A stretch of DNA of 64,000 bases from NCBI GenBank assembly GCA_977030845.1, contig OZ365118.1:3782001-3846000 (forward strand). The letters are read 5' to 3'. Both the position numbers and the translations under genes were made by a program. The notes beneath the pieces were generated by a model that ran no database searches, was not told where the DNA came from, and was given only the letters and a program-made list of their open reading frames with translations. Below, piece by piece: positions 31,729-63,991 of this stretch (the stretch's first letter is position 1; each line of letters opens with the position of its first letter). The stretch comes from Fimbriosthenelais zetlandica. Its lineage: Eukaryota.

Positions 31729-34700
31729 AAAAGGTTCAGACCAAAGACTTCTAAATAGAACAGTCCAAAACCCTGAAATATTCCAATAAATCTTCTCCTT
31801 TCTAATTATTTTAGATGGAAATTATGAAGCCATAGATTATTTAATTTTAAGGTGTATCGAGCTCAACCAGGGCTTTTTCTACCTGATGATATTAATAAAT
31901 TAATGACCTTTTATAATTTGATCTTTCAGGAGCAGCTTCGTCACAAACAGAAGTTTAACCTGGTCGCGTTTGACAGTAATGCTGTACCATGGCAGGGCCG
32001 GGCGGTGGATGTCAATGAGAAGAACCTACACCACGCCTGGCAGTGGTTGAAAGGCCTTAACTGCCGAGGGTCTACTAACACACTAGCTGCCCTCAGACAT
32101 GCCCTCAGTGACCCCCAAACACAGGCCATCTACCTACTGACCGATGGCCGGCCCGACCAGGTCAGTTCACATCTCTTAATATCCATTATTATATAGTGGA
32201 TAAACCATTTATAAGGCTTGACAAGTAAGGTCTATCCATTTTACAACATGCAAGGATTGGCCCCACTTCATTGCAATTAATTATGGTCAAAATAACCCAT
32301 GCGATTTCAAGCAATAGTGAATAGAAACTACAAATCAATGTATCTTTCAATCTAAATATAATAGAAAGTTGAAACATAAATTGAATTAATCTTTTCCAGC
32401 CTCCTCAGTCGATCCTAGCCCAGGTAATGCTCCACCCTAACGTCCCCATCCACACCATCTCATTCAACTGTTCAGACAGGGAAGCTAACCAGTTCCTCTG
32501 TCAGTTAGCTAAGGATACATCAGGCCGCTTTCATTATTACTCTGAGAACGGTATTGATCCTGAGGGACCAGAGCCGTGGGAGGTGAGTAAAGATAGACCC
32601 GTGACAACAAATATATTATTAAACATATTAATATATTATACTCTCATACTCTATATTGATCATGCTCTCTAGTGATCAGTTATACCTATAAACAACTGTC
32701 GCTCTCCTGTTATCATATTGGTGGAGAACCAATACTCGAATATAACCATTTTATTGATGAATTTGTTACGTTTTTCAGAGTGAGGACATACGTTTGTTAC
32801 GGCTGGAGTTGGAGCAGGGTTATCGTAACTTAGAGAAAATCGCAACGCTCAGAGACGAATGTGCTTCCCTCGCCTGGCGAAAAGACGATCTCAAAAGGTT
32901 AGTATTTCAAAGGAAATTTATTCTCCCCAATATGTTCACTATCAAATATTATCATAATCTAGTGAAATATTGACTAATAATAATACTTATTTCAGTTCTC
33001 GGGAGAGTTATAGTATGAGCTCGAGTGAGGAGTTGAATCGAGGAGTAACTCGCTTCTCACCTGCTCCACCTAGTGCTCACAGCCCCCGGGCCTCCACCCT
33101 CTCCTCTCACTCCACCTCCTCCACCAGGGCTAGAGTGGTGGTCCGTCCTCATAGCGTGGGCAGGTCAAAGGCTAAACGACCCATCACTGCAGGTGAGTCC
33201 ATTATCAAAAGCTAACTATTAATAAACTTTGTCAATCTATTGTCATTTTAAATCTAGTGCTGCTAACTAGGATATGAAAGGCCAGCCATGATTCCCACTG
33301 CCTGTGGTGAGAGGCATGTAATGTGTAAATGAATAATTCCTCACATTCGAGAAGGGCAGGAAATTGTTCCAACAGCGCGTTTTCTTCTCCAAATGAGATA
33401 ACTGAAAAACTGTTGACTGAAACAGTTCAGACATGCACTGTACAATTAGAATACTCCCTGAAGAGTTGACTCAACAATACATTCCACCCGAGGGAAATTA
33501 AAAAGTTAACCTGATGATTGGATTATAATTAAAGTTAATCTCTCTACAATATCATATTACCCATCTCCATTAGGATCCATTAATCTCATTAACCAGCGTG
33601 AGAATGCTGACCATCCCTGGAGGCAAAGGGGTAATGGTCACAAAGACCCTGTTGATTTGGAGATAAGGAAAATATATAATGTGGTATGGAAAGGGAATGA
33701 GAGTGTCAATGGATTTGAAATGTTTTATAGAAATATCCGGGTTTAAAAGGTCATTGAAAATGGCATCATTCCAGGCAGTATATTTTGAGCTATTTTACTG
33801 AGCGCATGCTTTACAATGTATCACATTGTGTGGCAGATCCCGGGGCTTTAATACTAAACATGGTGTTACATAACATGGCAATATTTCACGCGTTATATAT
33901 AGCAGCTTAACCAACCAACCCTTGTATTATATTGATTTCTGCTGGCTCTGACAGTAATACTGGTGCTTTGTGAGGCCATGGGCTCTCAGAGACGATTGTA
34001 GGCACTTATAACGGAATTATTACAAAGTAACTAAACTATAGGACCGGTGGGCACAGCTTAATATGTAATTACTGATAAGGAAATGCTGGTATTCTGCCAG
34101 ATATGGAACCAAATATAAATACACAACATACTTACAATTCCTTAAGTATGTTAGAATTATAAGGATTAGGAACTCTTAAAAAAAAAATAGATGCAAAAAA
34201 GCTGAAAGAACTTGGGGTCGGGGGTGGGGGGTATCTTACTCTATTATAATGGTATGCCACCCCCATGCTAAACCCCCACCCCCCCCCCCCCCCCCCACCC
34301 ACCCCCTACTTCCTCTCTCACACCCACGAGCTTTCAGCCACATATTAAAGCCGCACTGTTAAAGCTGTAGCTTGTAGCCTCAGCTTTCATGTGTTTGGGC
34401 TGGTCGGGTTGCTAGGCGACCAGTGACGCGCTCCGGTATAGCTCAGTGAAGTAAAACTGGTGGTCTGAGATAGGTAGAAACATGGGAAGGTAGAAGGCAC
34501 TGGACGAGCTCATAATATAGTCATGGGCAGTGTGAATATTGGAGTACCTAATGTGGGAGCCTATAGGAGGCCTGTCAAACTCATCAAAAGACCATCATCA
34601 GCTGGTAAATTAGTCATTTTTTATCTATTTTTTATACAAATTTTCTTATAATTCGGGAGAAGGAAGTATTTTAGGAGTGCTTGGATATTCTCAGCAGTGA

Positions 34701-40700: not shown

Positions 40701-43700
40701 CATCCCACTACCTGTCTCACCTGACATAACCCATCCCACCCTACCACGACCAGACACGGCATGTATTGTGTACCAGGTCATCAAGATTGTCAATTAAGAG
40801 AAGAGCAATGAATGTATTCATCTATTACTTTACTTTGTATGCCACTGAGGATCGATTCATTACCAGAATGCTACAAATCCCGTTATAATATGACATCCCC
40901 AAGTCAAATACCCAGTTCTGTGGACACTTAACTTTCTATTTGCGATTCGTCCATTCAATGTTTCCACTTCCCTGATTGTTTGTCGAGCAATGAATGCAGG
41001 CCAATCTTTGCGACTTTTCTATGATTCCTACCAATCCTACCAAAATTATATTTTTACTTCCTTCAACTTTTTCCTGCATGATTTTTGAAATATAATACTA
41101 CAGAATAAGAATGCAAGTTTTTGAACTAAATTCCTTCTAGCCTACATCCTTCTAGTATTCTGCTATTCCCAATTGAATAAAGAGGTATAATCGATGAGAA
41201 AAACCATTATCTCATAAATCTAAATACTTTAAAATCTATTTTAAATCCAGCCTCTGTATTCTTTTTCAGAAAAAGAAGAAACTTCAGAAACAGAAGCAAG
41301 CAAAGCGACTCTTCGACCAGCTTCGAGGACAGCGAGTGATTGGAAGAAATTCAGAGGATGGATTCTACTATGCTGGTACGATATCTGCCTCTACAGTAAT
41401 CTAAACATTCTATCACTGCAGATCAGGCAGTCTTATCAGTAATCTCTAAAACTAACTGTCAGAACTGTTGTGAACTATTTTACATTTTCTAGGATCTGTG
41501 CTGCGCTGTACTGATTTAAGACATGCCTTGACTGAGTTCGATGAGCTGGGGATTCAGAAGGTTCCTATCAGGTTCCTAATTCAAACATCTGGTGCCATCA
41601 GCGTTCCCCACTTAATGGTAGGTACCTAGAGCACCTGCACCTCACATATACCTGGTGCACAGAGGGCATTGTCTTGTTAATCTCTCAGAAGGCATTGTCT
41701 CTCCAGAATTATTATAGTTAATTCATTCGTTAACCTCATATTCCATTCATGGATGATTTACACTCATTTAAATCTGTCTTTCAGGCTGGAGACTATGTAC
41801 TGGCCAGGGTAGTGAATCAAGAAACCAACCTGGAATGTTACGTACCAGGTGTAGTACAAATGACACCCAGGGTGGTTCATACAAAGAGCAAATACTACAC
41901 AGTGGTCCTATATACTGGACAAAAGGTGTGTATAACAGTTACAATCAATGCCTTGCTGGTATATTAATGTTCAATACTTTGCATTCCCATTCAAATTGCC
42001 TCATTAATCCTGTGATTCGCTTTAATCAAAAACGCAACCAGGAATGTTGTCGCTTGAAATGACTTCAGTCATCTTTCTTCTTCTACTTCATTTTTTACTA
42101 TTTTTTCTAGGATCACTTCATCAGAAGTTACCTCAATAAGATCAGCAAGCTGCGCTACCTCTTCCTTGTTCGCTACATTCAAGATCTGAACCCAGTAGAG
42201 GAGCCAGAGGACTGTGAGGAAGAGTAAGTGACACTTCTCTATAATATATTATGCTTCATGCATGTTTCAGTTCTTTGGACCACCAATCATCACTGAATCA
42301 CTGATTTTTGTTCAGATTAAATTTAAATTGCAGCACAGTCTGAACTTGCATGTATAGTTCAAGGGAATAATTTTAAAAGGAGATCAAGCTAACTTAATTC
42401 ACCCTTTCTCATTGATTGAATTGGTTCACTGCTGTTATTGCTTTGGGTTCTGTTCTGTTTGAAAATATGTTTTAATGGTTTAAATTCTGGTTGATTTCAA
42501 GTTCAAAAGGGGAAGGAGACCTTGATGTTCATGTAGGAAGAAAACAAATCACTCTCAGTATTCCATACAGGTTAATGGTTTATATTACATTTACAAGCTT
42601 CTTAAATGGAATGCAAGCTTTATGTAGAGTAGATATACTGTAACATATTGTAATCTCATAACCCATAGAGGCATGTGGAATGACATTTTGGACATGAATA
42701 GCTCTAGAACAATTCTAGAAGTAGATAATCGGGGTTGATTTTTGAGTAGCGAATATTTTGGCTAGAGCAAGGGAGGGATCATTTTATTTGAACTTTAGAT
42801 ATTTTCAGTCTTTGGTTCAATTGTCAAGTGTTCATTACGATATATTGTTAATGCTTTTGATAGGCACAGTGGATGCTATTATTAGGATATTGTGGTGTAT
42901 ATATTATATCTTCGATATTATATGTGGTATTTAGGTAATAAGTTTTCTGATGGTTGTTTTGAGAGGTATTGGTGCATTTTGATGTTTTCTATATTCAATC
43001 TTTGACTGCATGATTCATTACGTCTCTCTTTTTTCCTCTTTAATAATGGTCTGACTATAGGGACAGTACAGATGGGGAGGCTGAATATACAAAAGAACCC
43101 CCCTCAGAATATCCTGATAATAATAAGATAGCTGGAGACAAACCCGCGTCGATCATGTATGATTCAGAGAGGAAGTCTCGATCCCGACCAAAACTGACAT
43201 TTAAAATAGAGACCAGATCACGATCACAGTCCCTCTCTGGGTCAGAGTCAAAGTCAAGGTCAAGATCAAGTTCCCTGTCCTTGGACAGAGCTAAGTCACG
43301 GGTTGGAGGGAAGGTGAGGTCAGATTCAGGCTCAGAATCAGACACCAAGTCAGGGAGTCTAGACAGATGTAAATCGAGATTTGCTCCACGACAAGACTCA
43401 AGGTCAGACGCTAACTCAAGGTCACCTTCACTTGACAGGTCAAAGTCAAGGTTAGCTGGGCAATCTAGATCCCACTCCCCGACTGATAGCGCTATCTCTC
43501 ACGGCTCTTCTCCAAGGTCATCCAAAAGTTCAGAGTCGGTCAAAAAGCTGAACCCAATATTGAAGCCTGCGCCACGACTGTCTCGTGTACGATCAGCCCA
43601 CCCTAGAGCAAAACCTAGAAACATTTCTAAACCAGTCCAATCAGAAAGTGGTCTAAAATCAGGAGCGGCCTCCCCATCACGGTCCCTGAGTGAGTCCAGC

Positions 43701-46700
43701 TCAGGATTGTCCTCCTCCAAGTCTCAACTGACTGATACAAAGAAATCAGTAACCAAGAGGTTTGTGCATGCTTCATGCTCCTCCTCTCTCCTCCCTACAC
43801 AGTACCTGCATGTATCCTTCACCCACCTTGAAGAAAGGCAGGCAGGGTCTGCTGAGTCAAACAAAACCCCCCATCATCAACTTGAAGGCCATTAATCAAC
43901 AAAATATAAATGAAAACTCCAGATGACATATCTAAGTGATGTTGCTGAGCAACCTGCCTTCATTTTTTCAGCCAATCTTTCCCACTTCAGATTTATTAGT
44001 ATCTTGAATTATTCTTCCTTGATAGAAGTGCCTCATGGAATAATCACCCCGGTAATATGGACCCAGAAGGGAATAACTAAATGAATATTACACTGGGAAC
44101 CAGGACTGCTCTATCTCTCATGCTAAATTCACTCTGAATTCCCATCAGGCATTTTCTGCATTATAATCTCGACTATTGCTTTTCGTATATCAATTGCCGT
44201 CAGAAAAATGGCACATTTTCCTCTGGTTTTGTCCTAATTTGCAACCACACCTCACAATAGACAGAACCAAAATCCTTGTAGAATGTGGAGTGCTTCAATG
44301 GATTTGAAAAGATAAAAGTGAAATTTTGAATCCACTTTTATCATTTTATTCTCAGGATAGTATAGGACATGAACCAGGCTTCCCACCTGTAGTATTTTAA
44401 CCCTCATCCTTTCCTTTCAGTCAGTTTATCATTCGTGGATGCATGAACTAATCCTTGAGTTACCAAGAGATGTAGTCGCATGATCCCAGTATACTGTACA
44501 CATTTCAACCAAAGCTTTTCAGAAATGTATATAAATTTGACTTTCCAATATACACTTTCTGTGGGAAATATACCTATAGACATACCAGTATATATTGTTG
44601 TATCAACATATTTTAGTAACACATACTAAAATACAACCATGTAACTTCATTTTAATTTAATTCTTTTCAGTTCCGACCAAGAGGCTGCCCGGTCCCTTTC
44701 ACCTCGTGAGTTCATTTAAATATTCTCAATCTTACACTCAACCTAACCAAAATTATCAGAGGTAAAATAGTAATGATATAGTAAGCAATACTTACAGATA
44801 GTACCCCGGCATTTTTCTCCATCTTTCAACCTCGGTTCTTTCCATCTTTAGCCCCCGATGAAGGCCTGGAAAAAGAAAAGCAGAGGTTGGAGAGGTGGCA
44901 GCGACACTTGGAAGAAATGCAGAAAAGTCAAAAGAAGGATCAAAAGGTGAGATTACTTTTTTCCATGCCACCCTTTGATGCATTCTTCCGCAAATTGTTC
45001 AAAGACTTTTATTAGTAATAAATATATTTTGTAATAATTTCCTTTTTTAATTTTTGATTTTTCAGAAGTTGAAGCGTCAGGCTCGGAAGTTAGAGAAGCT
45101 TCGACTGCGACTGAAGAATTCTCACAGTCACAATGACAACGAGCAACGCAAACTCTTAGAACTGATTCTACAAGAAACCAAGGTACATATATAATGACAT
45201 GCATGATAGAGGGAAATAGATTAATGTTATTGCATGCTCTGAGGAAGCTTTGTTATCAGTATGTGAATAATTGTAATGTTTGTTTGCAGCAAAACCGCGA
45301 TGAGGACAGGACTAGTAGCTGGGTGAAGGATCAGAACATTGAGATAGCTCTGGATAAAGAGAAGGGAGACATCCTAGTCTCCAGCGGAGATAAAGGGGTT
45401 CTTATATGTGAGACTTATTACATATATCCATCTTATAAATGCTACAAACCTACTAATCTTCAAAGACAAAATGGGCTTTTAAGTCATTACAAAAACAATG
45501 ATTAAGTACTTTACAGTTATTCTGATATGCAACTCTTTGTCTCTGGGTGAGTCATAGGAAAGTATTTTTAATTATTTTACTTGTTATTTTCAGCCCGGAC
45601 TGAAGCTCAGTCGAGCATTGTATCAGAGATGAGGAGGACACTGTCCAAGCTAGAGGTTGGGGAGGAGGTGTTGGCTCGGTGGTCAGATGAGGGCTGGTAC
45701 TACAGAGGTAGGTCTACATCACTCTCTATCATAGACATATTAATACAGTAAAATACCCATTAATAACCTTTCCTATTACTGATCACCCCTGATTAAGGAA
45801 CAAATTGAAACATTCTCAATATCAAGGTCCTAAAGTGGCGTATACATGAATAGAGGACAATCTTTTCACGAGGTCCATGCACTAATTAGTATAAATGGAT
45901 TGTGTTCATTATAGGTACAGTAAAGCAGCAGATAGAGGATCATAGCTACTATATCCAGGATGGTGTAGGTAACCTAGAAGCCATCCAACGAGAGGACATC
46001 ATTAGTGACCGTGATGATGCCAACGCTGTCATTAAAGTAAGTCTACATACAGAGAAAACCATTAATCACCAAACAAATATATTCATATGCAACTTAGTTT
46101 CAAGGTAGGTGTTCTAGAACACAAAGGGAGTCAGTAAAAAGCCTTGCAAGGCTCGGGAATTGAACCGCCGACCCTTCAATTATCAGTAACCAAAATGAAG
46201 CTGGTTCTCTTATCCCCTGAGTTGGTAAAAAGCCTTGCAAGGCTCGGGAATTGAACCGCCGACCCTTCAATTATCAGTAAACTGAATGAGCTGGTTTTCT
46301 CATCACCTTAGCTACTCCTATATGTTAACCTGTTATTCATTTCCCCTCATTTTTCCTCCAGGTCAAGGACACTGTGGTGGCACTCCACCCTGACTACATG
46401 TTCTCCTACGCCCCTGGCGTAGTGATGGAGACACAGAAGGACTACGCCATGTTAGTACGCTTCTATGACGGTCATGAGTCCCGCGTGTCACGGGAGGAAG
46501 TTTACCGTATACCCTCGGCTAAGTTTGAGCTGGATGTGGCGTTTATAGTGAAATGTGAGCAGGGCTGGGTGAGCCAGGCAGTGGTGGCCCGGAACGACGA
46601 CACAGGCGTCTTCCAACTGGGTAAGATTTTAATGATTTAAACATCTAAAAGTTACAACCATTCTATAGTCTTTCCAGAGACGGAGTATCCACCTAAACTC

Positions 46701-48485
46701 GGGCAGTATGGAGTAAGGGTTGGTTGTACTGCTACTTGTAAGGATGAGAGAAACATGAAAACAGAGCCTAACAGTTGGGCCTATTTGGTCGTTGATTCAT
46801 CACTAAATATTTCAATTCCCTTCTCATATTTTAGTAAACTATGTCTGTTACTTACTATTTGGGGTGATTAAGGTGAGTTAGCAGCTGTCTTCAAGAGAAT
46901 CGTAGAGTAGTTCCCAATGCAGTAAGTGTCTTTACAAAGCAGCAAACAAAGTCCAACTGACTGCAGTGGTTGGCAGTGAATATGGCAGCGATCAGCTGAT
47001 CGGGTGGGAGGGGGAAGTTCCGCATGAATGACTGGGTCACTGGGGTGGGTGGTGGGGGGGGGGGGGTGACCCAGCCCGGCATATTTACGACAATATGACT
47101 TAGAAAAGTTCAAAACTGTTGAGGGTAATTAGGGATTAATGACCGAGCCTGGGTTGGCGAGGCAGGTTAGAGAAAAGCTATGACTGAGGGCCGTCGAAGT
47201 CAATAGCTTTTCTCTAACCTGCCGAGCCAATCCAGGCGAGGTCATTGATCCCGTTAATACCCGACACAGTTTACCAATCAAAAATGGTAAGAAAATACTA
47301 TTTTTGTCTCCCTGCAGAGTTCCTGACTGGACACTGCAGTGGTTGGCAGTCAATATGGCAGCGATCAGCTGATCGGGTGGTGGGGGAAGTTCCGCATGAA
47401 TGACTGGGTCACTGTGGTGGGTGGGGGGGGGGGGGGTGACCAAGCCAGGCATATTTACGACAATATGACTTGGAAAAGTTCAAAACTGTTGAGGGGAATT
47501 GATTTGGATTAACTGTTTTGATTTTGTTGTTTGTAGGTGTGATTCGGGAGAGGATCGGGGATGGACGTCAGTACGTGGTTGAGCGGTCTGACGGTCAGCT
47601 GGCCATCCAGGTGGCTACCTGTATATTCGGGGCGTTTACTAAGAGACAGGAGTTTAATGAAGGTGACCATACACTGGCCATCATGGACAGTAAGTCACTG
47701 GTCTACCTTCCCGGTACTGTCACAGATGTACATGGTGGTAAAATGGTGGTGGAGTTCTGCAATGGCAATGTGTAAGTACCTACTACTTCTAACAATATTC
47801 TTTTACAAGTTCTTCTATAAGTTTTGTACTAATATTCATTCAGGGGGTTACCAAGAAGCAAACGGTTCCATTCCCTGTATCTGTCCCAAGCAATTGCAAA
47901 GCCTTCCAATCTTTTAAAAGTTCTTTTCTTATGTCACAAAGACAACTAGCTATTGGCAATTACAAATACGGAGTGTTCAGGTACATAATATTGGAGGGTT
48001 CAATCCCTGAACTATCCAAAGCATTTTCACAGTATCTGCCTTTAAAAAATGATAACGTTGTTTTGTCTTTGATCTTTCACTTCAGCGTTCACAACATCCA
48101 ACCAGCCCAGTGTTTCTGGCTGAGTAGAGATTACTATAAAAACGCTGTGGAATTCTACAAACAGCGTCAGACAGCCATGGCTGGAGGTGCCACCAGCGGG
48201 ACGGTGTGGACCAAAGATAACGAACGTCTCACCACAAAAACAACATACGAACTGATCGAGGAGAAGGTGGAGAGAGTGGAGATAGGGGATGATAAAGATG
48301 GAGGGTCTGACGGAGGGAGGTCTGATAGTAATGGGAAGAGCAGCTCACGCCGCAGACGCAGCAGTGGAAGCAGTGTGAGTAGCCGCTCCACCGACCCCTC
48401 CCACCACTCCTCTCACAGTGACGACGACCAGCCAGTAAAAACACATCAAAAACAAGACAAAAACGATGACGAATTCTTTGATTGA
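25289..48485 (+). CDS. VWA3B: von Willebrand factor A domain-containing protein 3B-like, long form (about 1950 aa, 35 core exons)
   Basis: Exons: 25289-25343, 25722-25964 (SSQKWLSTYGLKKNRL), 27901-27992, 29036-29286, 29519-29678, 29823-29891, 30060-30160, 30272-30510, 30864-31060, 31263-31417, 31542-31680 (ILIDTSSSM, MIDAS DxSxS), 31930-32160 (YLLTDGRPD), 32400-32582, 32779-32897, 32996-33192, 37348-37473, 37583-37634, 37786-37942, 38102-38244, 38449-38499, 38655-38868, 41270-41375, 41493-41617, 41785-41925, 42111-42223, 43061-43759, 44671-44705, 44852-44946, 45066-45182, 45290-45407, 45594-45707, 45915-46036, 46362-46620, 47537-47771, 48086-48485. All phases chain; total 5853 nt. Shows the recurrent SSxxWLxxYGL motifs of VWA3B and DUF4537/Tudor-like C-terminal repeats. 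Confidence 0.9.
26410..26480 (-). mobile_element. tRNA-derived SINE-like remnant
   Basis: Minus strand ggtcgtgggttcaaatctagatcagggtcg, B-box-like at 26431-26440. Confidence 0.4.
30709..30738 (+). CDS. VWA3B: Candidate 30-nt microexon of VWA3B (EGQREDHRTR)
   Basis: ctgcag / GAG|gtaaaa, phase 1-1, fits between exons 30272-30510 and 30864-31060. Confidence 0.55.
31696..31723. repeat. (TA)n microsatellite
   Basis: About 14 TA units in a VWA3B intron. Confidence 0.95.
35086..36424 (+). CDS. VWA3B: Three candidate symmetric cassette exons of VWA3B: 35086-35115, 35463-35537, 36395-36424
   Basis: 30, 75 and 30 nt, each phase 1-1 and open, with good acceptors (cctcttgccctacag, ttttgctatag, aacttttcag) and GT donors. 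Confidence 0.6.
40150..40294. mobile_element. ~145-bp MITE-like element
   Basis: Left end GGTGTCTTCAGGGTTCCC and right end GGAATCCCTGAAGGCACC form an imperfect ~18-bp TIR. Its CAGGGTTCCC core is shared with 13560-13688. Confidence 0.55.
46134..46280 (-). mobile_element. Tandem pair (period 91 bp) of tRNA-derived SINE-like fragments
   Basis: Two identical ~56-bp copies; the minus strand reads ggcggttcaattcccgagccttgcaaggcttttt (B-box GGTTCAATTCC plus T-run). Confidence 0.6.
46960..47500. repeat. ~170-bp direct repeats flanking a ~120-bp long hairpin
   Basis: About 46962-47130 and 47334-47500 are near-identical (ctgcagtggttggcagt...poly-G...aaactgttgaggg). The hairpin lies at 47132-47252. Confidence 0.85.
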
Positions 48486-49723
48486 TACCCTCTAAATCAA
48501 TATTCAATATATAATAAAATGAAAGGCCATTGCACAACCCACTGTTGCATAGATGACAGTTAGTTATGCAATGGGTCAGTTGTATATGACAAATTATGAT
48601 CTCGAAAATGATGCTTGAAATCACTTATGTATACTTATCACAATTTAAAGGTTAGAAGTCAGTTATGTGCTAGTTTAATTATTTACTGAATTTGTTTAAA
48701 TATTTAATTTATCAAGAGTAAAATGTGATATGGGCACTATCTCTACATTGAGGTATTACGTCATCAGAGATAGAGTGATGCCATCAACAGGCCTGTAACC
48801 TTGCCGTCCATTTATATCAAGCTCAACCTGTGATAATTATGAAATCTCTGCTCCTGTTATTAACTGTAATTTACACAATATAATTATTGTGACGAGCACT
48901 CATACAAACCCTCAATCATTGTATTTCATTGTAATAGAAGCCTGGCCTTACACAGGAACTAGTCCTTTATATTGACCATTTTAATTCCCAATCATTTCTG
49001 TACTCAGCGAATAAATGCATAGAAACATGCACGGAGTAACATGTGCAGCTTTTCACTGTCATTTTCTTATATTTTTTTAAAAATTGTTCCTACCAACTCT
49101 CACGCATTTGCCTCCCCCTCACTCCCTCACGCTACTACCATTAAATCTCACGCCTACAATTGATAAATGAATTGGAATAAAAGAGGAATTTCCCAAATAA
49201 CCTGGCGAACAGGAAAACTATTTTATTTAAATTCCAATCGTAATTTATCATTGATAAACAATCTGGATATCTTCAACCGGGATATTTCTAATAAATGGAA
49301 TGCATAATTGCCTTAAATTTTAAATTTCAAAAGCTATGTAGACCTACACCATTACCCGAAACTGGAGCGTTTGCAATTTTGAGGGAGCAAAGAATCACAC
49401 TCCTGCATTTTTTTAGTGTGATGCACTCAAGCACGCTGTTTTAATCCATGATGTAGCCGAGGCCAAGCCTATGGGAATGTAGGCTTAGTGTAGGCCTACT
49501 ACTAGTAGTATGGTTTGGTGGGTGAGGTTGTCTCCAGGTCTACTATGTTTCGGAATTATTTAATGTTATCGAATAAAATTAAGTATACCTTTGCCCTCCC
49601 CTCCCCCACCCCCTAACAAACAAAAATTAAAACAAATTAAAACTCTCTGATCAAAATGAGTAAGTTTCTGACCAGGTCAAACATGTGCCCCTTGCCAATT
49701 TACTGGACGTTTGGATATTTCAG

Positions 49724-52343
49724 GATCATGCCTCAGATTCACGCTTGTTAGACCTAGAAGCAGAGCTAAATCAAGCCACAGATGAAATAGTCAGAATCAA
49801 GGGGGAGAAAGACGAGGTAAGGTTATCATTCCAATAAAAAAAAGAATAAGAAAAAGAATCATAATATGAGATGCGTAATTATTTGACCCACAAGATGCAT
49901 AATTATATATAAGACCCACATGGTTTGACCTATCACTTCTTTAGAAGCTATTTATCAATGCCAATTCTGTCTTGGGTTTGCAGGAGTTGAAGTCACGGGA
50001 GTTGAAGTTAAAAGTTACCCAGGACCGTTTGGAGCAGTCTGAATCCACCAACAGGTCCCTGCAGAACTATGTAGAATTTCTCAAGAATTCCTACGCTAAT
50101 GTATTTGGTGACAAATCGACCAATTCGGTTGAGATTGAGGATCTTCAGAATCAACTCTACGGATCTCAAGAGGAATCGAAAGATCTGCGCTCTCAAAATG
50201 ACGAACTTCGGAGGTGGGTTCCTTTATCTAGAAATTTATCTAGAAACACTAAGGTTTGGATATGGGTAAAGTAAGGAAAATTAAATCCGGAATCTAATAA
50301 TTTGTTTTGACTCACTATAACCTGACTTACTATAATTTATAGTAATTTAGTGCCATCTTGTTTCAATTTAGTTATTGAAACCTGTGATATTCAACTGGTT
50401 TGGTTATTTACTTGCAGCCATTTTGAAGAGATGGCAAGGGACAAACACGAATTACAAGACATACTTAAATCAAGAGAAGATGAATTACGTCAAAGCAATG
50501 TAGGTACAGTTTAATCATGTATAAAAAGGTTATATTTTCTATAAAATTAATGATGTCTAGCCAAGCAAGATACATTAAAAAACTTATAAATAAATCAATG
50601 AAACAATACTATATCCAATTGAATATTAATTAGACTAGGCACAGCAAAAGTAACGTATATATAGCTTTAAAAAAATATTACTGTCGAATAAAAAAAGAGC
50701 ACTCTTGATGCTGAGATGATAATTTTAAATACTTGTTTCAGTCGCAAAATCTTTGATCCATAGAATTAAATTAATGAATTCATGGTATTTCAGGATCCTA
50801 CCTCAGATTCACGCTTGTTAGACCTAGAAGCAGAGCTAAATCAAGCCAGAGATGAAATAGTCAGAATCAAGGGGGAGAAAGACGAGGTAAGGTTATCATT
50901 CCAATAAAAAGAAGAATAAGAAAAAGAATCATAATATGAGATGCATAATTATTAGACCCACAAGATGCATAATTATATATAAGACCCACATGGTTTGACC
51001 TATCACTTCTTTAGACGCTATTTATCAATGCCAATTCTGTCTTGGGTTTGCAGGAGTTGAAGTCACGGGAGTTGAAGTTAAAAGTTACCCAGGACCGTTT
51101 GGAACAGTCTGAATCCACCAACAGGTCCCAGGAGAACTATGTACAATTTCTCAAGAATTCCTACGCTAATGTATTTGGTGACAAATCGACCAATTCGGTT
51201 GAGATTGAGGACCTTCAGAATCAACTCTACAGATCTCAAGAGGAATCGAAAGATCTGCGCTCTCAAAATGACGAACTTCTGAGGTGGGTTCCTTTATCTA
51301 GAAATTTACAAACACTAAGGTTTGGATATGGGTAAAGTAAGGGAAATTAAATCCGGAATCTAATAATTTGTTTTGACTCACTATAACCTGACTTACTATA
51401 ATTTATAGTAATTTAGTGCCATCTTGTTTCAATTTAGTTATTGAAACCAGTGATATTCAACTGGTTTGGTTATTTACTTGCAGACATTTACAACAGATGG
51501 AAAGGGAAAAACACGAATTACAAGACATACTTGAATCAAGAGAAGATAAATTACGTAAAAGCAATGTAGGTACAGTTTAATCATGTATAAAAAGGTTATA
51601 TTTTCTATAAAATTAATGATGTCTAGCCAAGCAAGATACATTAAAAAACTTATAAATAAATCAATGAAACAATACTATATCCAATTGAATATTAATTAGA
51701 CAAGGCACAGCAAAAGTAAAGTATTTAAAGCTTTAAAAAATGTTACTGTCGAATAAAAAAAAAAGAGCACTCTTGATGCTGAGATGATAATTTTAAATAA
51801 TTGTTTCATTCGCAAAATCTTTGATCCATAGAATTAAATTAATGAATTCATGGTATTTCAGGATCATACCTCAGATTCACGCTTGTTAGACCTAGAAGCC
51901 AAGCTAAATCAAGCCAGAGATGAAATAGTCAGAATCAAAGGGGAGAAAGACGAGGTAAGGTTATCATTCCAATAAAAAAAGAATAAGAAAAAGAATCATA
52001 ATATGAAATGCATAATTATTTGACCCACAAGATGCATGCATAATGATATATAAGACCCACATGGTTTGACCTATCACTCCTTTAGAAGCTCTTTATCAAT
52101 GCCTATTCTGTCTTGGGTTTGCAGGATGAACGGGAGTTGAAGTCACGTTTAAAAGTTACCCAGGACCGTTTGGAGCAGTCTGAATCCACCAACAGGTCCC
52201 AGCAGAACTATGTACAATTTCTCAAGAATTCCTACGCTAATGTATTTGGTGACAAATCAACCAATTCGGTTGAGATTGAGGATCTTCAGAATCAACTCTA
52301 CAGATCTCAAGAAGAATCGAAAGATCTGAGTTCTCAAAATTGA
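49724..52343 (+). CDS. ODF2/cenexin-derived coiled-coil gene fragment made of three tandem ~1.07 kb copies; start codon not identified
   Basis: Exons 49724-49816, 49984-50213, 50418-50499, 50794-50886, 51054-51283, 51484-51565, 51862-51954 and 52125-52343 chain in frame (1122 nt) with intact GT-AG. DRLEQSESTNRS.QNYV.FLKNSYANVFGD closely matches the C-terminal motif of vertebrate ODF2 (DRLEQSESTNRSMQNYVQFLKSSYANVFGD, recalled from memory). May be a young gene or a pseudogene. Confidence 0.7.
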
Positions 52344-53871
52344 CAAAATGACACTTTCTAAGACTGAATTACGAGAAACAGTTGTCACAAGAGAAGAGAC
52401 ATCACATCAAAGCCCGGAGCCTCTTTTCCCACTAACAATAGGCTCGAAGTGATAGATAGGTTCACATATATGGCGGGTTTTAGGAACCTCAAAGCACCAG
52501 GGGATTTCCCTATAGCTTTCTCACATATATGCCTACTTTATCACCAATAAACTCTCTTAATCAAGTACTTGATCTGGTAAAATCTAATGTGTCGATTTTA
52601 ATTTACCCCACTTTCAACTGTCGTAAAGCACGTATGCCGTTTTATTTATAATAAAGCAATATTAAATTTAAATGAAGATGTGTTGACTAGCAAATTGTAA
52701 TACGTTTTAGAAAACTAGTTCTAATGAAGAATTTATGTCTGGGTATGTAATTCAATGAGCCACTAGAATTTGTATGCAGTATGTATGGCATAAAAGTTTA
52801 TTTTCAGCTTCTGTTCTTTGAAAATAAGATCAGTCATGAGTGTGCTCAGAAACTAAAAAATTCCAAATAAATTTTTAAAATTCACAATTCCTTTCAATGA
52901 TAAAACAAATGACTTGAGTTAAAAGTAAAAGGACATGTAGTTTCTTGTAAGATGTCTGGAGGGAGAGAAAGAACAAGAGAACGCCTGAAGTATGCTAGGA
53001 AGGATTAATAAACAAGTTGCCTCGAATTTATTTACATTTTGATAAAACACAGGACAACCTGTTGGTGTGATGGACCATAGTGAGGTCCACTGGGGGTATA
53101 AAACAAACTATACTCTATATACTAAACTCCAATAGTTCACACTGGCGTCTCATCCAGGGTCAATAGCCGGTCAAAGGGTGGTCAGAGAGGGGGGGGGGGG
53201 GGCATGGTCAGCCGCCACGACGTCACAATCAAGACGTTCAAACGTCACACCAATCATACAAAATCCCTGATACAGAAAATAACCTCACTCACGGTCCCAC
53301 AGATGATAGCTGTACATACAGTTACCCTGCTTCAGTTAAAGTCTCTAAAGAACATAAAAAACATTCTCCAAAATACAAACACAATTTACCTCTACATCAT
53401 TTTAATTAGATTTTCAAGGTTATACATTTCCCCTCAGATTGTTTAAGATGATTAAATAGCACGCACGGGAAATAAAACCCTTTCGTTAACATATTTTGAT
53501 CGCGATTCTTTGACTCTGAATTCACATACATTCCGATAAGTTCATGGCAGCTAAAATTTTCATGAGATCATTAACATTCTAGTGAGGGAGATGCGTCATT
53601 GACAGGGAAATCTTAACACGTTATAATAATAAACCTCGATAAAAACAGGTTAAGACGAATATAAGGCAATTAGATAACATATAGATCTCATAAATAAGCA
53701 TTAAGTCATTTTGTGATTAAATCTTGATGCGAGCATCCAGTGCTCTTAATCCAACCTCAAAGGAAAATATTGACAGACAAAAACCTAGAAGTGTTGTTAA
53801 GTGCTTAGATTACAGAATTTGTCTCAGATCTTTGATGCACAATTAGGGGTAATATTAATGACATGGGGGGA

Positions 53872-53887: not shown

Positions 53888-54474
53888 TATATTATACCAC
53901 CTCAACATATCACACGCCTATCATCCTAACAAAGAAAAACATGGATAAAATATCAGGGCTGAACAAAAGTTCAAAGTGCGTTCACCTGGAATGAAAATTG
54001 CTGTGACGTCGTGGCCGGCCAAATTTAGCAAAATATTTTCACTGTTTTTTTTTCTTGGTCATATTTTAGTGCAGACAATCTTGTTATTTTTCTGTCCCTT
54101 TTTTGTTGGTCAGGGATCATATATATATATACCGGGACCCAGCTCAATCTATGGACGCCATTTTGTTGGTGCTCAGCCCAAGGTGGGAATCACCAAGAGG
54201 TCAGACATAACCAAACCAGGCATCGAAACATGATCAAACAAAACTGTGGAACTTATTGTTTCCTTCTGGGCCAGGGAACATTGTCTTTTGACGGAGATAG
54301 CACTGCGCTAGGGATACATTACTGTCACGTGATAGTCACGTGGTAATCTGGATGGATCAGATGCTGACTACAGTATATGGGTGGTAAATAAAACGTGAAA
54401 ATAAACTGAATTTCTCAATTTTTCCTCTGAGTGGTTATTGTACGACTGACTCTTGTAATGATCATCTTTCTCAC

Positions 54475-54588
54475 TCTCTCACTGAGTGACGTCATCAGTT
54501 GACAAGTAACACTCTCTCACTGAGTGACGTCGTCAGTTGAGAAGTAACACTCTCTCACTGAGTGACGTCATCAGTTGAGAAGTAACAG
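54475..54588. repeat. 38-bp tandem repeat, three copies, each containing a CRE palindrome
   Basis: tctctcactgagtgacgtcatcagttga.aagtaacac; TGACGTCA at 54487 and 54563, TGACGTCG at 54525. Confidence 0.92.
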
Positions 54589-55084: not shown

Positions 55085-55300
55085 AACTGATAATTAACTG
55101 CAGTCAGTGATAACTGAACTTTCAGCAATTATTGACTGAACTTTCAGTGATAATTGACCGAACTTTCAGTGATAATTGACCGAACTTCCAGTGATAATCA
55201 ACTGAACTTTCAGTGATAATTGACCGAACTTTCAGTGATAATCAACTGAACTTTCAGTGATAATCAACTGAACTTTCAGTGATAATCAACTGCAGTCACT
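55085..55300. repeat. 22-bp minisatellite, about 9 copies
   Basis: Unit ctttcagtgataattgaccgaa / ctttcagtgataatcaactgaa. Confidence 0.92.
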
Positions 55301-57693
55301 GACAATCAACCCCAGTATGGATACTGTACAGTGAGTACAAGCTACCATCATGAGCAACTCACAACAACCATTCATAAACAAAAGACAAACATCAACTGAC
55401 ATGAGCTGCTGACATGGTGAATGTGGTCAGTGAATGATTGTAATGACTGACATCATAACTGACATCATTCAGGTGTAGATGTGAGTATAGGGGATTATAC
55501 CAGGATTAAGGTAGTTATCATGAGGTGAGATCAGTAACACTGACTGGCGGATAACTGTACAAAAGCTGCTGCTGCCTCGTGATATGTTTATAGAGCATCA
55601 CGCGTGGTACCTTCTAGTTAATATGACACATATGAGTTACATTTCTACTCACTTCTCTCTCCTCCAATTAACAACCACTCGCACCAGCCCAACACAGGCT
55701 ACACAGGCGTATAGAATTTTTTTTCAGAACATTTTCCTCATTTTTCTTTTCAGACATCTCCGTTTAAAATTAGTCCTCAGAGTCAAAAAATTGGAAAAGA
55801 TATCACCCAGCACCAAGCACCAATGTCCACGACAGGAATAACTGCCTAAAATATAACTATTATTTGGTGAATGTCTGGAACAGCAGGCACCCTTAACTAG
55901 GAAAATATTGAGCAACTCTCTTCAAAATCTAACATCTTCTGTTCTCAAGAGAGACAAAAAAATGATACCGGCTAAATTCTGGACTTAGCATTGCTCTCCA
56001 GGCAGATAGTCAAGACAATGGTTAAAAATCAGAGTAACCTTTCATAATCAAATCATATTCCTTACAATCATAAAGCAGCTAAGTCAACCAAGTTACCGTA
56101 AAAATGGAGTAGAGAAATCAAACTAGATCCGAGAGAGGATTGCCCCTAACATTTGGTCATAAAACAGCAAAAGTATCTTTGAGATAAAATTCAGAAAAAA
56201 AACAACAAAATTTCCCAATTTTTGCAAGATTGACTTAGAATGAGGGATTGAATGCCTGGAGAGCACAGGGAGACATTACCCCCCGACCGACCCTCCCTCC
56301 CACCCACCTACCCACCCTCCCACCCTGCCCGTGACTGGAGTTCTAAATGGCCATCTGTAAAAGACAACATATACCAAGCTGACAGAGTATGCGCCTGGCT
56401 CCCACCAAGGCTGCATGTACCTACAAAAATAGCCACTCCACTATAATCCACACTCACCCCCACCCCTCCCACCCCCACCATCATCAACCACCCAATTCCC
56501 TCCGCACCAAATGTTAACCCATTCATTTCGAAAAATTTCAGAATTTCCCTAAATTTCATAAAGAAGATGATGGCGAGTTTGACAAGGGTAGAACATGTGG
56601 AGTGGAACCAAAGTTGAAGAGTAGCTAGACGGAGGCTGGTGGCCGTGGAAAGGGCCGGCCAACTCTGTGTCACCCGATGTGTGTAATACCCGGGGGGGAA
56701 GATGGTTATTATCCAATAACCGAGGAACGGCTGCGTCTTGTAATCATGGTTATATAGAATGTGTATAATATAGTATCACTGGTCCAGTAGGCATGGCAAC
56801 GCGTATCACAGCCAATCAACACAGCGTCCGTGCTACAGGCTCGCTACAAGATACTACAACAGATCTGTGTCAGAAACCACCGCCTTTAAATTCCACCCGA
56901 CATATGCTACCATTACAATATAGTCATTATTAATTTGGAAAAATCTGAAATATTTGTATTGGGAATGGCAAGATTTTTTGTGTCCATTTAAATTTAAAAA
57001 TTTAGTTTTATCAAAGTTGAAGTGGGTTGAGAATGGAAGCCGGGGGTAGATTTAGGACGGGGTATATATAGATCTAACACCATCTGAGGGTACTGTAGCT
57101 GAGCCAGGATGACCGTCTTTACATGTACTGTCATGCTCTGCGCTGTCGAGACTTCTGATCATCGCTCCCAGCAAACAAATGTGGACAGAGTGAGAGGAGC
57201 ACCTCACTCCGCCTCTGCTGCCATTCATGCATTGAGGAGCTCAGTCTGTTCAAAAGCTGCAACACAGACATATACTTGTATGTCCATGAAATAATCATTC
57301 CACCATCCATTACCTGGGTTCACTTATTCCCACTTATATACGGAGCTGCCAATGGTCTGAGTACCAAAAAACACTTCATCTTTCCGTAGAATTTCTCTCG
57401 CTTCCTTCCTCCCATCTCAACATGCTTCAAAAGACTGGAAATCTTCAAATCCGCGGCCCTCCCCGAGATCGATGAATAATAGTAGCCACGTCCCCTCCCC
57501 TAGTAAAATAAAGAGAGAGGGGAGGAGAGATCCTCCCTCTCTCTCTCTAGTAGCGACACAGGGTGTGATGTAGGAAGCACAGTTCTCAGTCTCTGTCTAC
57601 ATCTCCTTCATCTTCTCTCTTTCTCTCTTCTCTTATCTGTATACATATATATATATATCATGCTGGACTGTGTGATGTGGTGGCATCTTGTGG

Positions 57694-61589: not shown

Positions 61590-63991
61590 ATGATAAACTG
61601 GTTGTTCAGTCGTCCAAAGAGCAACATTCCAGAACCGACTGCCTTACAAACACAGAGAGCTAAGCAAATTGACCAGCTGAAGGCCTTTAATCAGAAGTAA
61701 GTATCGCTGAACTCAGAGGGTGAGAGTGAGATCGGGACGGGGGGACAGGGGCTGTAGCCCGGGGACAGACAGTGATGACTGTCTTTAGCAAAGTTTCGTT
61801 TTCTATATGTCATTTTAACTGTATGTATAACGTCGCAATGTGGGTTTTGTTGGATATCCATTTTTACACAGCGAACGAACGAGGAAGCAAAACGAACCAT
61901 AGAATTTAATGACATACAGTAGGCGTATTTGGTGTTGTTAGATCAGATCATCTGAATGTAATTCTACTCAGTCATAATGTAAAAATAGTTTCGTCTGTCT
62001 GACCTCATACATTACACAACTCTTATTATTCTCTTGCAGCGTCTCTGAAATACACCGTGATGTAGAATATCGAGTGAACTTCATTGTCAGCGGGTCAAAT
62101 CTATCCCTTTATATGTAAGTTCATTTACTACACCCAAATCAAATACTACCCCCCACCCCCGCCAAAATAAAAATGTATAGATATCAGCTGGAGCTAAAAT
62201 ACTATATAATAATTGTATATTAATGTGGCCTCTAGTCCCCAGTTTTCTTCCTTGCTAATGAACCGTTTCAAATTCGGTTTAATGTCCTCTCTGAAGCTAT
62301 TTTAACCTAAAGCTTCTTTTTTTTTTTTTTCAGAACATTACCACCCCAGTTTCCACAAGAGCGACCCACAGTAAAAGTATCCCCGCCAGTCAGACATCCC
62401 TGGGTGAACGACCTGCAACTAGTCACCGGCTGTACAGGCTTGAACAATGTGAGTGTCAAATTATAGAATGAAATAAAATATACTACTGTATTAGTCCCAA
62501 TGGATCCACAATTAATTATTAACTTTTATATTACAGTTCGTGGTTCACTCGGATTTAGGAAAGGTCATACGATCAATAGTTGAAGAGTTCCAAAGAAACG
62601 CTCCCGTCATGCTGCCCCAACAGTCATTGTATGTATCCTGTATCTAAGATTTATATAACTTTATATTTCTCATCTAGATAGGAAGAGTTACATTTATAAA
62701 ACTTGATATTTTGGATTAATTATAATCCTCACATCTAAAATCCAAACTAATATAGCATTTTACTTGTAATTTGTTTTATACATTTTCATGTATTTTTTCT
62801 TGTAGCACACCTCGTGGCTTGCCCTACCCGGTTAACCCTAGCCACCCCACGCCGCCTACACTGACAGGCTACACGCCATATCCAGGGTTAAGTATGCCTA
62901 AACCTACATACATGGCTGGAGTAGCCATGCCAACCCTGGCGCCTTCAAGCTCCTCCTCCTCCAACATTCCACACCTCCCTACCACTGCATATCAGCCACC
63001 CACACACCAAAGTGTAAGCTCGAGTAATTTACATTTTAATTAATTAATTAATTTATTCAATTAATTTACATTTAATCTTATAATTATCTTTAAATATTTG
63101 ATGTGAATCTAATAATATTTCCCCCTACTTTAAGTCTCTTATCAGTTCGTCGGGATCAAGTTTGATCAGATCAGGGTCCCCCTATGCCAGTCCTGTCGGT
63201 TCATCTTATCAAATGCCTGAGATGCCCCACTCTATTCCCGCCATACAAGATATGAGGTAAGTTTTTTTTTCACTATTAGAATTATAGATATGTATGTTAC
63301 TTTATGGAGACAGAAGTCTAAAGTTACTCTTTTTTGCAGTGTACAAGAGCTACAAAAACTAGCGGACGACGAGGACCGGATACTGGAGATGCTCCGAGAT
63401 TTTCCCCAGATGGAAAAAATAGCTCAAGACAGACAAAGCCTGTTCAAGGAAAACGAACAACTCGCCGAGGACAATGTGGCCAAGAAACCTCTCATGGAAG
63501 AGAATAAACGTTTACTGCTAGAAAAGGTATTTGTATTTCTTATGTTGGATTTGAAATATATCTTAAGATAAAGGTTGATATCAATTAAATATATCCTGCA
63601 CATTTTAACTTTATCCCTATATCTTATCAATATTTTATCTCTTGTAGTATGACACATTGAATGACCTTCGACAGAAGTTTGATGAGAAATGTTCACAACA
63701 AGAAGTTCTGCGTGGAAAGTTTGACCCGTCTGCCTTACAAGCCAACCTCAAAGTGGCGGCCATGGGAGCCGAGGAGGAGGCCGAGAATGTGGCCGAGGGC
63801 TTCCTCGACGGTCAGTCTATATTACATATACTATTTGTTTAAGTTCTTACAAGCCAAGACAATCTGAATGATTGAAAACTTATATGGACAATATCTAAGT
63901 TTAGAAAAGCAGCGTAACTAGCAATTACTAATTTATTTCAGGGTCGATGCCAGTTGATGAATTTCTAAAGAAATACATGGATAAACGGAAG
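61590..63991 (+). CDS. VPS37A: ESCRT-I subunit VPS37A (partial; continues past the right edge)
   Basis: Exons 61590-61696 (MINWLF...LQTQRAKQI), 62040-62114 (DVEYR), 62334-62448 (LPPQFPQERP, UEV-like), 62537-62628 (HSDLGK), 62806-63013 (Pro-rich), 63135-63256, 63340-63526, 63648-63810, 63942-63991 (Mod(r) domain, GFLDGSMPVDEFLKKYMDKRK). Confidence 0.93.

What the first reader, a model, noticed from the sequence alone, without database searches (positions are those of the whole stretch)
49724..52343. Young chimeric ODF2/cenexin-derived gene: triplicated exon block with every splice site and frame intact
Three ~1.07-kb copies give exons A-B-C-A-B-C-A-B* in one open frame (about 373 aa). Exon B fuses the terminal motif of ODF2 (…SYANVFGD, normally close to the stop) to a coiled-coil segment (KSTNSVEIEDLQNQLY.SQEESKDLRSQNDELR) that splices on to exon C. 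I infer a tandem-duplication breakpoint that joined the parent's last exon to an earlier exon and created a repeatable module. The rest of ODF2 is absent and no in-frame start was found. The block lies 1.2 kb after the VWA3B stop on the same strand, so it may be a new gene, a read-through extension of VWA3B, or a recent pseudogene. ODF2 is a sperm-tail and mother-centriole protein, so a repeated C-terminal binding motif could act as a multivalent scaffold or decoy (speculative).
Basis: partly seen in the sequence, partly recalled or inferred. Interest (0 to 1): 0.78.

Follow-up and report, generated by a model that had tools for sequence, protein, structure and literature searches.

The report
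Repeated, reshuffled ODF2 tail-exon array
A probably annelid genome carries, on a different chromosome from its normal ODF2 (sperm-tail and centriole) gene, three head-to-tail copies of that gene's last few exons that still read as one open frame and show signs of having been kept by selection, but no RNA data could be found, so it is not shown to be a working gene.

Summary
Window 49715-52413 is a 2.5-unit tandem array with a period of about 1070 bp. Its exons run A-B-C-A-B-C-A-B*, every AG/GT splice site is intact, and the frame is open for 373 codons.

The source is the full-length ODF2 gene on another contig (C1:33492076-33515835). The unit copies its last five exons (X, C, Y, A, Last) with their introns, so this is a DNA-level copy and not a retrocopy. 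Exon Y has been deleted. Exon B is the head-to-tail junction: the last exon, cut right after ...SYANVFGD, is joined at or near the acceptor of exon X. The unit is therefore a circular permutation of the ODF2 tail.

"Young" is only half right. The copies differ by 2-4%, but the array differs from the parent by 17-30% in alignable DNA.

Several results point to past coding constraint:
- dN/dS is about 0.1 on the 30-codon ODF2 motif.
- There are no stops.
- The few exon indels all keep the frame.

Exon C instead changes faster than its introns, with 9 differences in 82 nt, all nonsynonymous.

No start codon, 5' exon or RNA evidence was found. A direct splice from the penultimate VWA3B-like exon would be out of frame. 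I rate it a well-resolved partial-duplicate exon array of moderate interest whose expression is unproven.

The parts
49715..52413 (+). Whole ODF2-derived tandem array: 2.5 units with a period of about 1070 bp. Homology to the parent starts 9 nt before exon A1 and ends inside the exon C3 remnant.
49724..49816 (+). Exon A1 (93 nt, phase 0-0). It is homologous to the parent's penultimate exon, C1:33515444-33515536.
49984..50213 (+). Exon B1 (230 nt), a composite exon. The first 129 nt match the parent's last exon up to ...SYANVFGD. The remaining 101 nt are 28 nt of unassigned junction sequence followed by sequence collinear with parent exon X.
50113..50140 (+). Junction filler of unit 1 (encodes KSTNSVEIE). 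It comes either from the last ~15 nt of the intron before exon X or from the diverged start of exon X. The assignment is not significant (shuffle p=0.18).
50418..50499 (+). Exon C1 (82 nt, donor GTAGGT). It is homologous to parent exon C1:33514504-33514585.
50630..50650 (+). Remnant of parent exon Y in unit 1: about the last 20 nt plus the old GT donor. The rest of the 114-nt exon is deleted.
50794..50886 (+). Exon A2
51054..51283 (+). Exon B2 (composite exon, as B1)
51484..51565 (+). Exon C2. It differs from C1 at 9 of 82 nt, and all 9 differences are nonsynonymous.
51697..51716 (+). Remnant of parent exon Y in unit 2
51862..51954 (+). Exon A3
52125..52343 (+). Exon B3. Its head (DERELKSRL) is closer to the parent (SERKFNSRL) than those of B1 and B2. 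It ends at a TGA (52341-52343) that sits where the sequence CAAAAT(T)GAC appears twice in a row. It has no donor.
52366..52413 (+). Remnant of a third exon C, left after a deletion of the B-C intron and about the first 31 nt of the exon. It is 42/48 identical to the parent but only 35-36/48 identical to C1/C2.
48086..48485 (+). Last exon of the upstream VWA3B-like gene (stop 48483-48485). AATAAA lies at 48513. A GTGAGT lies in phase 0 at 48375.
52546..52655 (+). Two AATAAA signals (52546 and 52650), 200-300 nt after the array's stop codon

Best explanation
The array is an old, DNA-level partial copy of the 3' end of this species' ODF2 gene. It sits on another chromosome, in the spacer between a VWA3B-like gene and a VPS37-like gene.

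The copied segment ran from about the acceptor of exon X to just after the codons for ...SYANVFGD in the last exon. It is present head-to-tail. Each unit-to-unit junction therefore welds the truncated last exon to exon X, making the 230-nt exon B. The coding order A-Last'-X-C is a circular permutation of the parental order X-C-Y-A-Last. Exon Y (114 nt, phase 0-0) was later deleted without breaking the frame.

Both ends of the array fall inside the unit: one just before exon A and one inside exon C. A single insertion of a pre-formed concatemer (from a circular or rolling-circle intermediate, or a piece of a larger array) is simpler than an in-place duplication followed by two end deletions. 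This step is inferred.

The conserved ODF2 motif, the frame and the splice sites have been kept while the introns decayed. I therefore think the block has served, and most likely still serves, as coding exons of a lineage-specific transcript whose 5' exon is not yet found. The product would be a coiled-coil protein with three copies of the ODF2 C-terminal motif, and its exon C part is diverging unusually fast. What it binds is unknown. By analogy with ODF2, whose C-terminal domain is needed for recruitment to basal bodies, it may sit at or compete for ODF2's sites on centrioles or sperm flagella. This last point is speculative.
For: Shown:
- Only two places in the 447-Mb genome match exons A and B: the array and C1.
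- The C1 gene covers residues 1-829 of a crinoid ODF2-like protein.
- Homology includes the introns: 83% in the best-aligned cores and 70-77% in BLAST blocks.
- The order of the blocks is permuted. The X-C half of the unit also matches other species' ODF2 about 130 residues before the C-terminus, upstream of A and Last.
- All 116 library hits to exon B cover only the motif half. In the full-length (about 600-870 aa) hits the match lies near the C-terminus, and the hits whose names were looked up are called ODF2.

Evidence of constraint:
- The motif core has dN 0.07-0.09 against dS 0.76-0.97. This beats a null in which only the parent is constrained (p about 0.02).
- Simulated neutral drift leaves the 135-codon unit free of stops in only 1-6% of runs.
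- The aligned intron cores show 16 gap events in 467 nt, while the 405 exon nt show at most 2-3 length changes, all frame-keeping.
- 14-21 amino-acid changes fall on the array's branch against 1 on the parent's, yet the invariant motif residues are kept.

Fast change:
- Between units 1 and 2 there are 17 nonsynonymous and 2 synonymous differences.
- Exons differ at 19/405 sites against 14/651 in introns (p=0.03). Exon C differs at 9/82 sites (p=4e-4).

From the literature: an ODF2 construct lacking its C-terminal domain is not recruited to basal bodies (PMC3824012, read).
Against: - No RNA evidence: no sequencing run was listed.
- There is no in-frame ATG before A1. The only candidate first exon is a 4-codon ATG...GTGAGG at 49510-49521, which is no better than chance.
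- Units 1 and 2 differ in a way that also fits plain neutral drift (expected about 15 nonsynonymous to 4 synonymous; observed 17 to 2).
- Outside the motif, dN/dS against the parent is 0.4 to above 1, which is what a dead copy would show.
- The third unit is damaged by a premature TGA and a deletion.
- Earlier unchecked scan notes report many kb-scale tandem duplications in this genome, so the triplication itself need not be selected.
Confidence: 0.55

Rival explanations
1. The array is a dead relic: a partial ODF2 duplicate that was never a gene, or stopped being one long ago. Its frame is open only because a still-intact unit was re-duplicated recently.
For: - No start codon, no promoter or 5' exon, and no RNA evidence.
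- Differences between the copies are mostly nonsynonymous (17 to 2).
- Exons are no better conserved than the alignable introns: about 71% against 70-83%.
- The third unit is truncated by a stop and a deletion.
- The three copies are not independent tests of an open frame.
Against: - dN/dS of about 0.1 on the motif core with high dS.
- A 1-6% chance of no stop under drift.
- Far fewer indels in exons than in introns, and all of them in frame.
- All six splice dinucleotides of the unit are kept.
- Exon C differs between copies five times more than the flanking introns, which relaxed constraint alone cannot produce.
Confidence: 0.3
2. The exons are alternative 3' terminal exons of the upstream VWA3B-like gene. 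A transcript would splice from that gene into exon A1 and append ODF2-like repeats to VWA3B.
For: - The array is on the same strand, 1.24 kb downstream.
- It has an acceptor but no start of its own.
- A GTGAGT donor lies in phase 0 inside the last VWA3B exon (exon end 48374). It would join A1 in frame and replace the last 36 residues (read).
Against: - The donor of the penultimate VWA3B exon is in phase 2. A direct splice to A1 (phase 0) meets a stop after 9 codons.
- AATAAA lies 28 nt after the VWA3B stop, and five more AATAAA or ATTAAA signals lie before the array.
- A phase-0 GT in a 400-nt exon is expected by chance.
- No RNA data exist.
Confidence: 0.1
3. The three copies are an assembly artefact: a falsely expanded or haplotype-merged repeat.
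For: - No reads could be laid on the region.
- A 2-4% difference between copies is in the range I would expect for heterozygosity in marine invertebrates (from my own general knowledge).
Against: - The unit is only 1.07 kb and the whole array 2.7 kb. Long reads of the kind usual for chromosome-scale assemblies would span it, though the sequencing method was not checked here.
- The copies differ by indels, by a rearranged exon B head shared by two of them, and by a damaged third unit.
- The fused exon B itself requires at least one real head-to-tail junction.
Confidence: 0.04

Closest known systems
ODF2 / cenexin (outer dense fibre protein 2)
   Same: It carries the family's most conserved stretch, DRLEQSxSTNRSxQNYVxFLKNSYANVFGD, with nearly all invariant residues. 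The exon-intron structure and the introns are homologous to this species' own ODF2 gene.
   Different: Only about the last 170 of roughly 830 residues are represented. Exon Y and the short tail after the motif are missing. The order of the segments is circularly permuted, and the module is repeated three times, so the motif is internal in units 1 and 2 instead of C-terminal.
Circular permutation by duplication (tandem duplication followed by loss of both ends); from my own knowledge of the model
   Same: A head-to-tail repeat of a coding segment gives a reading frame that starts in the second half of the module and ends in the first half. Here A-Last'-X-C replaces X-C-(Y)-A-Last.
   Different: Here it is seen at the level of exons and introns, in a partial gene copy at an unlinked locus, and with more than two units. 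The model is usually inferred from protein domains.
In-frame tandem amplification of exon blocks, such as LPA kringle IV-2 two-exon repeats or the NBPF Olduvai (DUF1220) exon doublets derived from the centrosomal gene PDE4DIP; from my own knowledge
   Same: A kb-scale unit of several exons with symmetric phases is repeated in tandem with splice sites and frame kept. The copies are kept alike by recent duplication or concerted evolution. In NBPF the source is likewise a centrosomal coiled-coil gene.
   Different: There are only 2.5 units. Expression and copy-number variation are unknown. One exon of the unit is itself a fusion created by the duplication junction.
New genes from partial DNA-level duplicates (dispersed segmental duplicates that recruit a new 5' end)
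   Same: A 3' fragment of a parent gene, with its introns, lies at a new locus next to an unrelated gene.
   Different: No recruited 5' exon, promoter or fusion partner has been identified, so it cannot yet be called a chimeric gene.

Membership tests
ODF2/cenexin | Conserved C-terminal motif (DRLEQS-STNRS-QNYV-FLK-SYANVFGD) | tested here: met
   All 116 hits of exon B align to this motif. The hits whose names were looked up are called ODF2. The window copies keep 27-28 of the parent's 30 residues in this stretch, including nearly all positions that are about 90% or more conserved across hits.
ODF2/cenexin | Full-length coiled-coil protein of about 600-870 residues including the N-terminal and central regions | tested here: not met
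   tblastn with two full-length ODF2 proteins and blastn with the parent gene find only the terminal exons in the window.
ODF2/cenexin | Motif lies a few residues from the C-terminus (median 16 in 56 hits) | tested here: not met
   In units 1 and 2 the motif is internal and runs on into exon X sequence. In unit 3 it is followed by 30 residues and then the stop.
Processed retrocopy | Introns absent, with a poly(A) remnant | tested here: not met
   All the parent introns that fall within the unit are present and alignable to the parent.
Transposon-captured gene fragment (Helitron- or Pack-type) | Fragment lies inside a multicopy element with element ends | tested here: not met
   Exons A, B and C occur only in the array and, for A and part of B, in the parent. 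The flanks hold only ~80-bp MITE-like repeats outside the array.
In-frame tandem exon-block amplification | Unit length in exons divisible by 3, with splice sites kept in every copy and an uninterrupted frame across copies | tested here: met
   93+230+82 = 405 nt. All 8 acceptors and 7 donors are AG/GT. 373 codons are open.
In-frame tandem exon-block amplification | The repeated exons are spliced into an mRNA | not testable with these tools
   No sequencing run was listed for this DNA, so the read-laying step could not be run.
Circular permutation by duplication | Segment order in the derivative is a rotation of the order in the parent, with a head-to-tail joint | tested here: met
   The parent order on C1 is X 33514158, C 33514504, Y 33514913, A 33515444, Last 33515662. 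The window order is A, Last'+X, C.

The most novel reading that the evidence does not exclude
The array is the coding body of a selected, lineage-specific gene. Its product would be a circularly permuted, three-fold repeat of the ODF2 C-terminal module, expressed in sperm or ciliated cells, where it binds or competes for ODF2's partners. Repeat-to-repeat diversifying selection acts on exon C. If so, it would be a case of permutation by duplication caught at exon resolution in a reproductive or ciliary protein.
Probability: 0.3. Interest if true: 0.55.

Novelty: new member of a known kind. Interest (0 to 1): 0.38.

Why it matters
If it is expressed, this would be an unusually clear natural example of how a duplication junction can turn the end of one exon and the start of another into a new, repeatable exon. 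It would also show how a circularly permuted protein module arises, with parent, breakpoints, lost exon and selection signals all readable from one genome. ODF2 is central to sperm tails, centriole appendages and ciliogenesis, so a repeat protein built from its recruitment domain would be a natural probe for what that conserved motif binds. If it is not expressed, it is an ordinary decaying partial duplicate in a genome that seems rich in small tandem duplications.

Tried and rejected
Nothing can be said about expression, copy number or population variation.
- Independent assemblies: an exact-protein look-up with the VWA3B-like last-exon ORF failed once for lack of a slot and then found no record.
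- A back-translated pattern for the fusion junction found nothing in metagenome contigs.
- Literature: no paper was found on ODF2 partial duplicates.
- Complex prediction of exon B with the parent's last exon gave no verdict (score 0.12). It is not evidence either way.
- Pfam gives nothing specific for exons A, B or C, only weak sub-threshold coiled-coil families.
- Exact junction: I first read the linker KSTNS as the tail of the intron before exon X (CCAATTTCAG). A shuffle test does not support that assignment (p=0.18). The first 28 nt after GGTGAC are left unassigned.
- I considered whether the deletion in unit 3 is a processed (spliced) X-C joint. It starts at about the old donor of exon X but ends at no AG in exon C, so I treat it as a plain deletion.
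- Retrocopy and transposon-capture origins were rejected (see the membership test).
- Three search calls failed on a parameter limit and were repeated.
Full report
**1. What is there**

Window 49715-52413 holds 2.5 head-to-tail units with a period of about 1070 bp. The repeat finder reports three copies at spacing 1070/1068 bp and 96-98% identity. Tandem Repeats Finder did not report it because its longest period is 500.

Reading the sequence gives these exons:
- A, 93 nt: 49724-49816, 50794-50886 and 51862-51954.
- B, 230 nt: 49984-50213 and 51054-51283.
- C, 82 nt: 50418-50499 and 51484-51565.
- A shortened B3, 52125-52343, that ends at a TGA.

All eight acceptors end in AG and all seven donors start with GT. 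The exon C donor is GTAGGT. In one search I first set exon C three bases too long; the 82-nt version is the one with a GT donor.

**2. Where it comes from**

A six-frame search of the whole 447-Mb assembly finds exon A and the first half of exon B at only one other place, contig C1 near 33.515 Mb. The window is C37:3782001-3846000.

tblastn with full-length ODF2 proteins from the library shows that C1:33492076-33515835 encodes a complete ODF2, covering residues 1-829 of the crinoid protein. The proteins used were a crinoid 'outer dense fiber protein 2-like' and others.

The last five exons of the parent gene are:
- X: 33514158-33514258
- C: 33514504-33514585
- Y: 33514913-33515026
- A: 33515444-33515536
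- Last: 33515662-33515835

The parent protein ends ...SYANVFGDASVVTSSPMRSTFY*.

blastn and a global alignment show that the window unit is homologous to this stretch including its introns. It is therefore a DNA-level copy and not a retrocopy.

The order is rotated. Exon A and the first 129 nt of exon B match A and Last up to the codons for ...FGD. The rest of exon B matches exon X. Then come the X-C intron, exon C and the remains of the C-Y-A interval.

Exon Y has been deleted. Only about its last 20 nt and the old donor remain, at about 50630-50650 and 51697-51716. Because Y is 114 nt long and starts and ends between codons, its loss keeps the frame.

At the protein level the X-C half of the unit also matches other species' ODF2 about 130 residues before the C-terminus, upstream of A and Last.

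On the last-exon side the break is right after GGTGAC. On the other side it lies at or within about 20 nt of the exon X acceptor. From nt 29 of the second part onward the sequence is collinear with exon X. The first 28 nt (KSTNSVEIE) cannot be assigned with confidence.

**3. How the array was probably made (inferred)**

The array begins 9 nt before exon A and ends inside a third exon C. Both ends therefore fall inside the unit, and neither a leading exon X nor a complete trailing Last exon is present.

An in-place tandem duplication of a single inserted copy would need two further deletions to give this. Insertion of a ready-made concatemer needs one event. Such a concatemer could come from a circular or rolling-circle intermediate, or be a piece of a larger array that has since been lost. 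I favour the concatemer but cannot test it.

The array is not part of a multicopy element. Its flanks hold only ~80-bp MITE-like repeats.

**4. Age**

Units 1 and 2 differ at 14 of 651 intron positions (2.2%). Unit 3 differs from them by about 4%.

Against the parent, identity is 83% in the best-aligned intron cores and 70-77% in BLAST blocks. The introns have lost or gained long stretches, and a SINE sits in the parent's Y-A intron that the units lack.

After B3 there is a 48-nt remnant of a third exon C (52366-52413). It is 42/48 identical to the parent but only 35-36/48 identical to C1 and C2. The head of B3 is also closer to the parent than the heads of B1 and B2, which share a net-zero rearrangement.

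The locus is therefore old. The present likeness of the copies reflects recent re-duplication or concerted evolution, which the damaged right end escaped. 'Young' applies to the copies, not to the locus.

**5. Signs of selection**

(a) *Motif core.* In the 30-codon core of the ODF2 motif, dN is 0.07-0.09 and dS is 0.76-0.97 against the parent. If only the parent were constrained, about two thirds of the differences should be nonsynonymous. Observed are 5 of 14 to 6 of 16 (p about 0.02). Outgroup ODF2 sequences place 14-21 amino-acid changes on the array's branch and 1 on the parent's. The array still keeps almost every invariant motif residue.

(b) *Stops.* Random substitution of a 405-nt proxy of the ancestral unit to 15-28% divergence leaves no stop in only 1-6% of runs.

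(c) *Indels.* Aligned intron cores show 16 gap events in 467 nt. At that density about 14 would be expected in the 405 exon nt. At most 2-3 are seen, and all keep the frame.

(d) *Outside the motif.* Here the picture is different. Exon A has dN/dS of about 0.4-0.5, which is what a neutral copy would show against a constrained parent. The X-C part has dN/dS above 1.

(e) *Between units 1 and 2.* There are 17 nonsynonymous and 2 synonymous differences. Exons differ more than introns (19/405 against 14/651, p=0.03). Exon C alone has 9 differences in 82 nt, all nonsynonymous (p=4e-4 against the introns). An earlier first-stage note on the same stretch made the same point, and my counts agree.

The numbers are small, and a mutation cluster or a conversion tract from a lost copy could mimic the pattern in exon C. 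Taken together, I read the block as having been under coding constraint for much of its history, with fast and possibly adaptive change in the coiled-coil parts.

**6. Gene context**

The upstream + strand gene has a VWA_3 domain at 31852-32193 and four DUF4537 hits between 41.7 and 47.8 kb. This fits VWA3B. It stops at 48483-48485.

Its penultimate exon ends in phase 2, whereas exon A1 starts in phase 0. A direct splice would therefore hit a stop after 9 codons.

A GTGAGT in phase 0 inside the last exon (exon end 48374) could in principle join A1 in frame, but such a site is expected by chance. AATAAA lies 28 nt after the VWA3B stop.

Between 48.5 and 49.7 kb the only ATG-to-donor candidate in the right phase is a 4-codon mini-exon at 49510-49521. 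In units 2 and 3 an ATG lies in frame 12 nt before the exon A acceptor (ORFs at 50782 and 51850). This would matter only if transcription started inside the array.

Downstream, AATAAA signals lie 200-300 nt after the TGA. The next recognisable gene is a VPS37-like Mod(r) exon at 63.3 kb. The 5' end of any transcript remains unknown.

**7. Expression**

None could be shown. No public run was listed for this DNA. No predicted protein among 1.84 billion representatives spans the junction, and every hit stops at about residue 50-68 of exon B. A junction pattern found nothing in metagenome contigs.

**8. How it might work**

[quoted passage not shown] The units derive from that region of the protein. 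A protein with three copies of the motif could therefore go to the same sites or compete for the same partners. This is analogy only. A complex prediction between exon B and the parent's last exon gave no verdict.

**9. Comparison and verdict**

The block is not a member of the ODF2 family in the sense of a full-length orthologue. The motif test is met, while the architecture and motif-position tests are not.

It is a partial duplicate that fits two known patterns. One is in-frame tandem amplification of an exon block, as in LPA kringle IV-2 or NBPF Olduvai repeats. The other is circular permutation by duplication. Both comparisons come from my own knowledge. Unchecked scan notes suggest that small tandem duplications are common in this genome, which lowers the surprise.

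I rate it a new member of a known kind. It is structurally well resolved and shows real but modest signs of selection, and whether it is a working gene remains open.

My odds are:
- Coding exons of an expressed lineage-specific gene: about 0.55.
- Relic: about 0.3.
- Alternative 3' exons of the VWA3B-like gene: about 0.1.
- Assembly artefact: about 0.04.

Noticed in passing
window 46134-46308; also C1:33515359-33515406 (L004 about 1174-1221): A tRNA-derived SINE-like element (GGGAATTGAACCGCCGACCCTTC...) is present as 1.9 tandem copies of 91 bp inside an intron of the VWA3B-like gene. A related copy sits in the Y-A intron of the parent ODF2 gene and is absent from the array units.
   Followed up: partly
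window 49009-49088, 49099-49260, 49374-49427 and 52449-52530: Short interspersed repeats of about 55-95 bp, MITE-like, flank the array. Each has dozens of copies at 75-91% identity across many contigs. The array itself is not repeated elsewhere.
   Followed up: partly
window 43155-43895 (+): A long open frame rich in Ser/Arg/Lys low-complexity sequence (SRSRS..., KSRS...) lies between DUF4537 exons of the VWA3B-like gene. It has no Pfam match. It may be a species-specific insert exon.
   Followed up: no
window 63290-63568 (+): An exon with a Mod(r)/VPS37 domain (Pfam PF07200, E=1e-10). It is the next recognisable gene downstream of the array, about 11 kb away on the same strand.
   Followed up: partly
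window 54472-54587 and 55112-55316: Two small tandem arrays in the gene-poor spacer: a 38-nt unit repeated 3.1 times and a 22/44-nt unit repeated about 8 times. Their meaning is unknown.
   Followed up: no
window 50782-50784 and 51850-51852: In units 2 and 3, but not in unit 1, an ATG lies in frame 12 nt upstream of the exon A acceptor (MVFQ|D...). A transcript starting inside the array could therefore begin translation there.
   Followed up: no
window 49596-49616: A C-rich tract (ccctcccctcccccaccccc) lies about 100 nt upstream of the left edge of the array.
   Followed up: no
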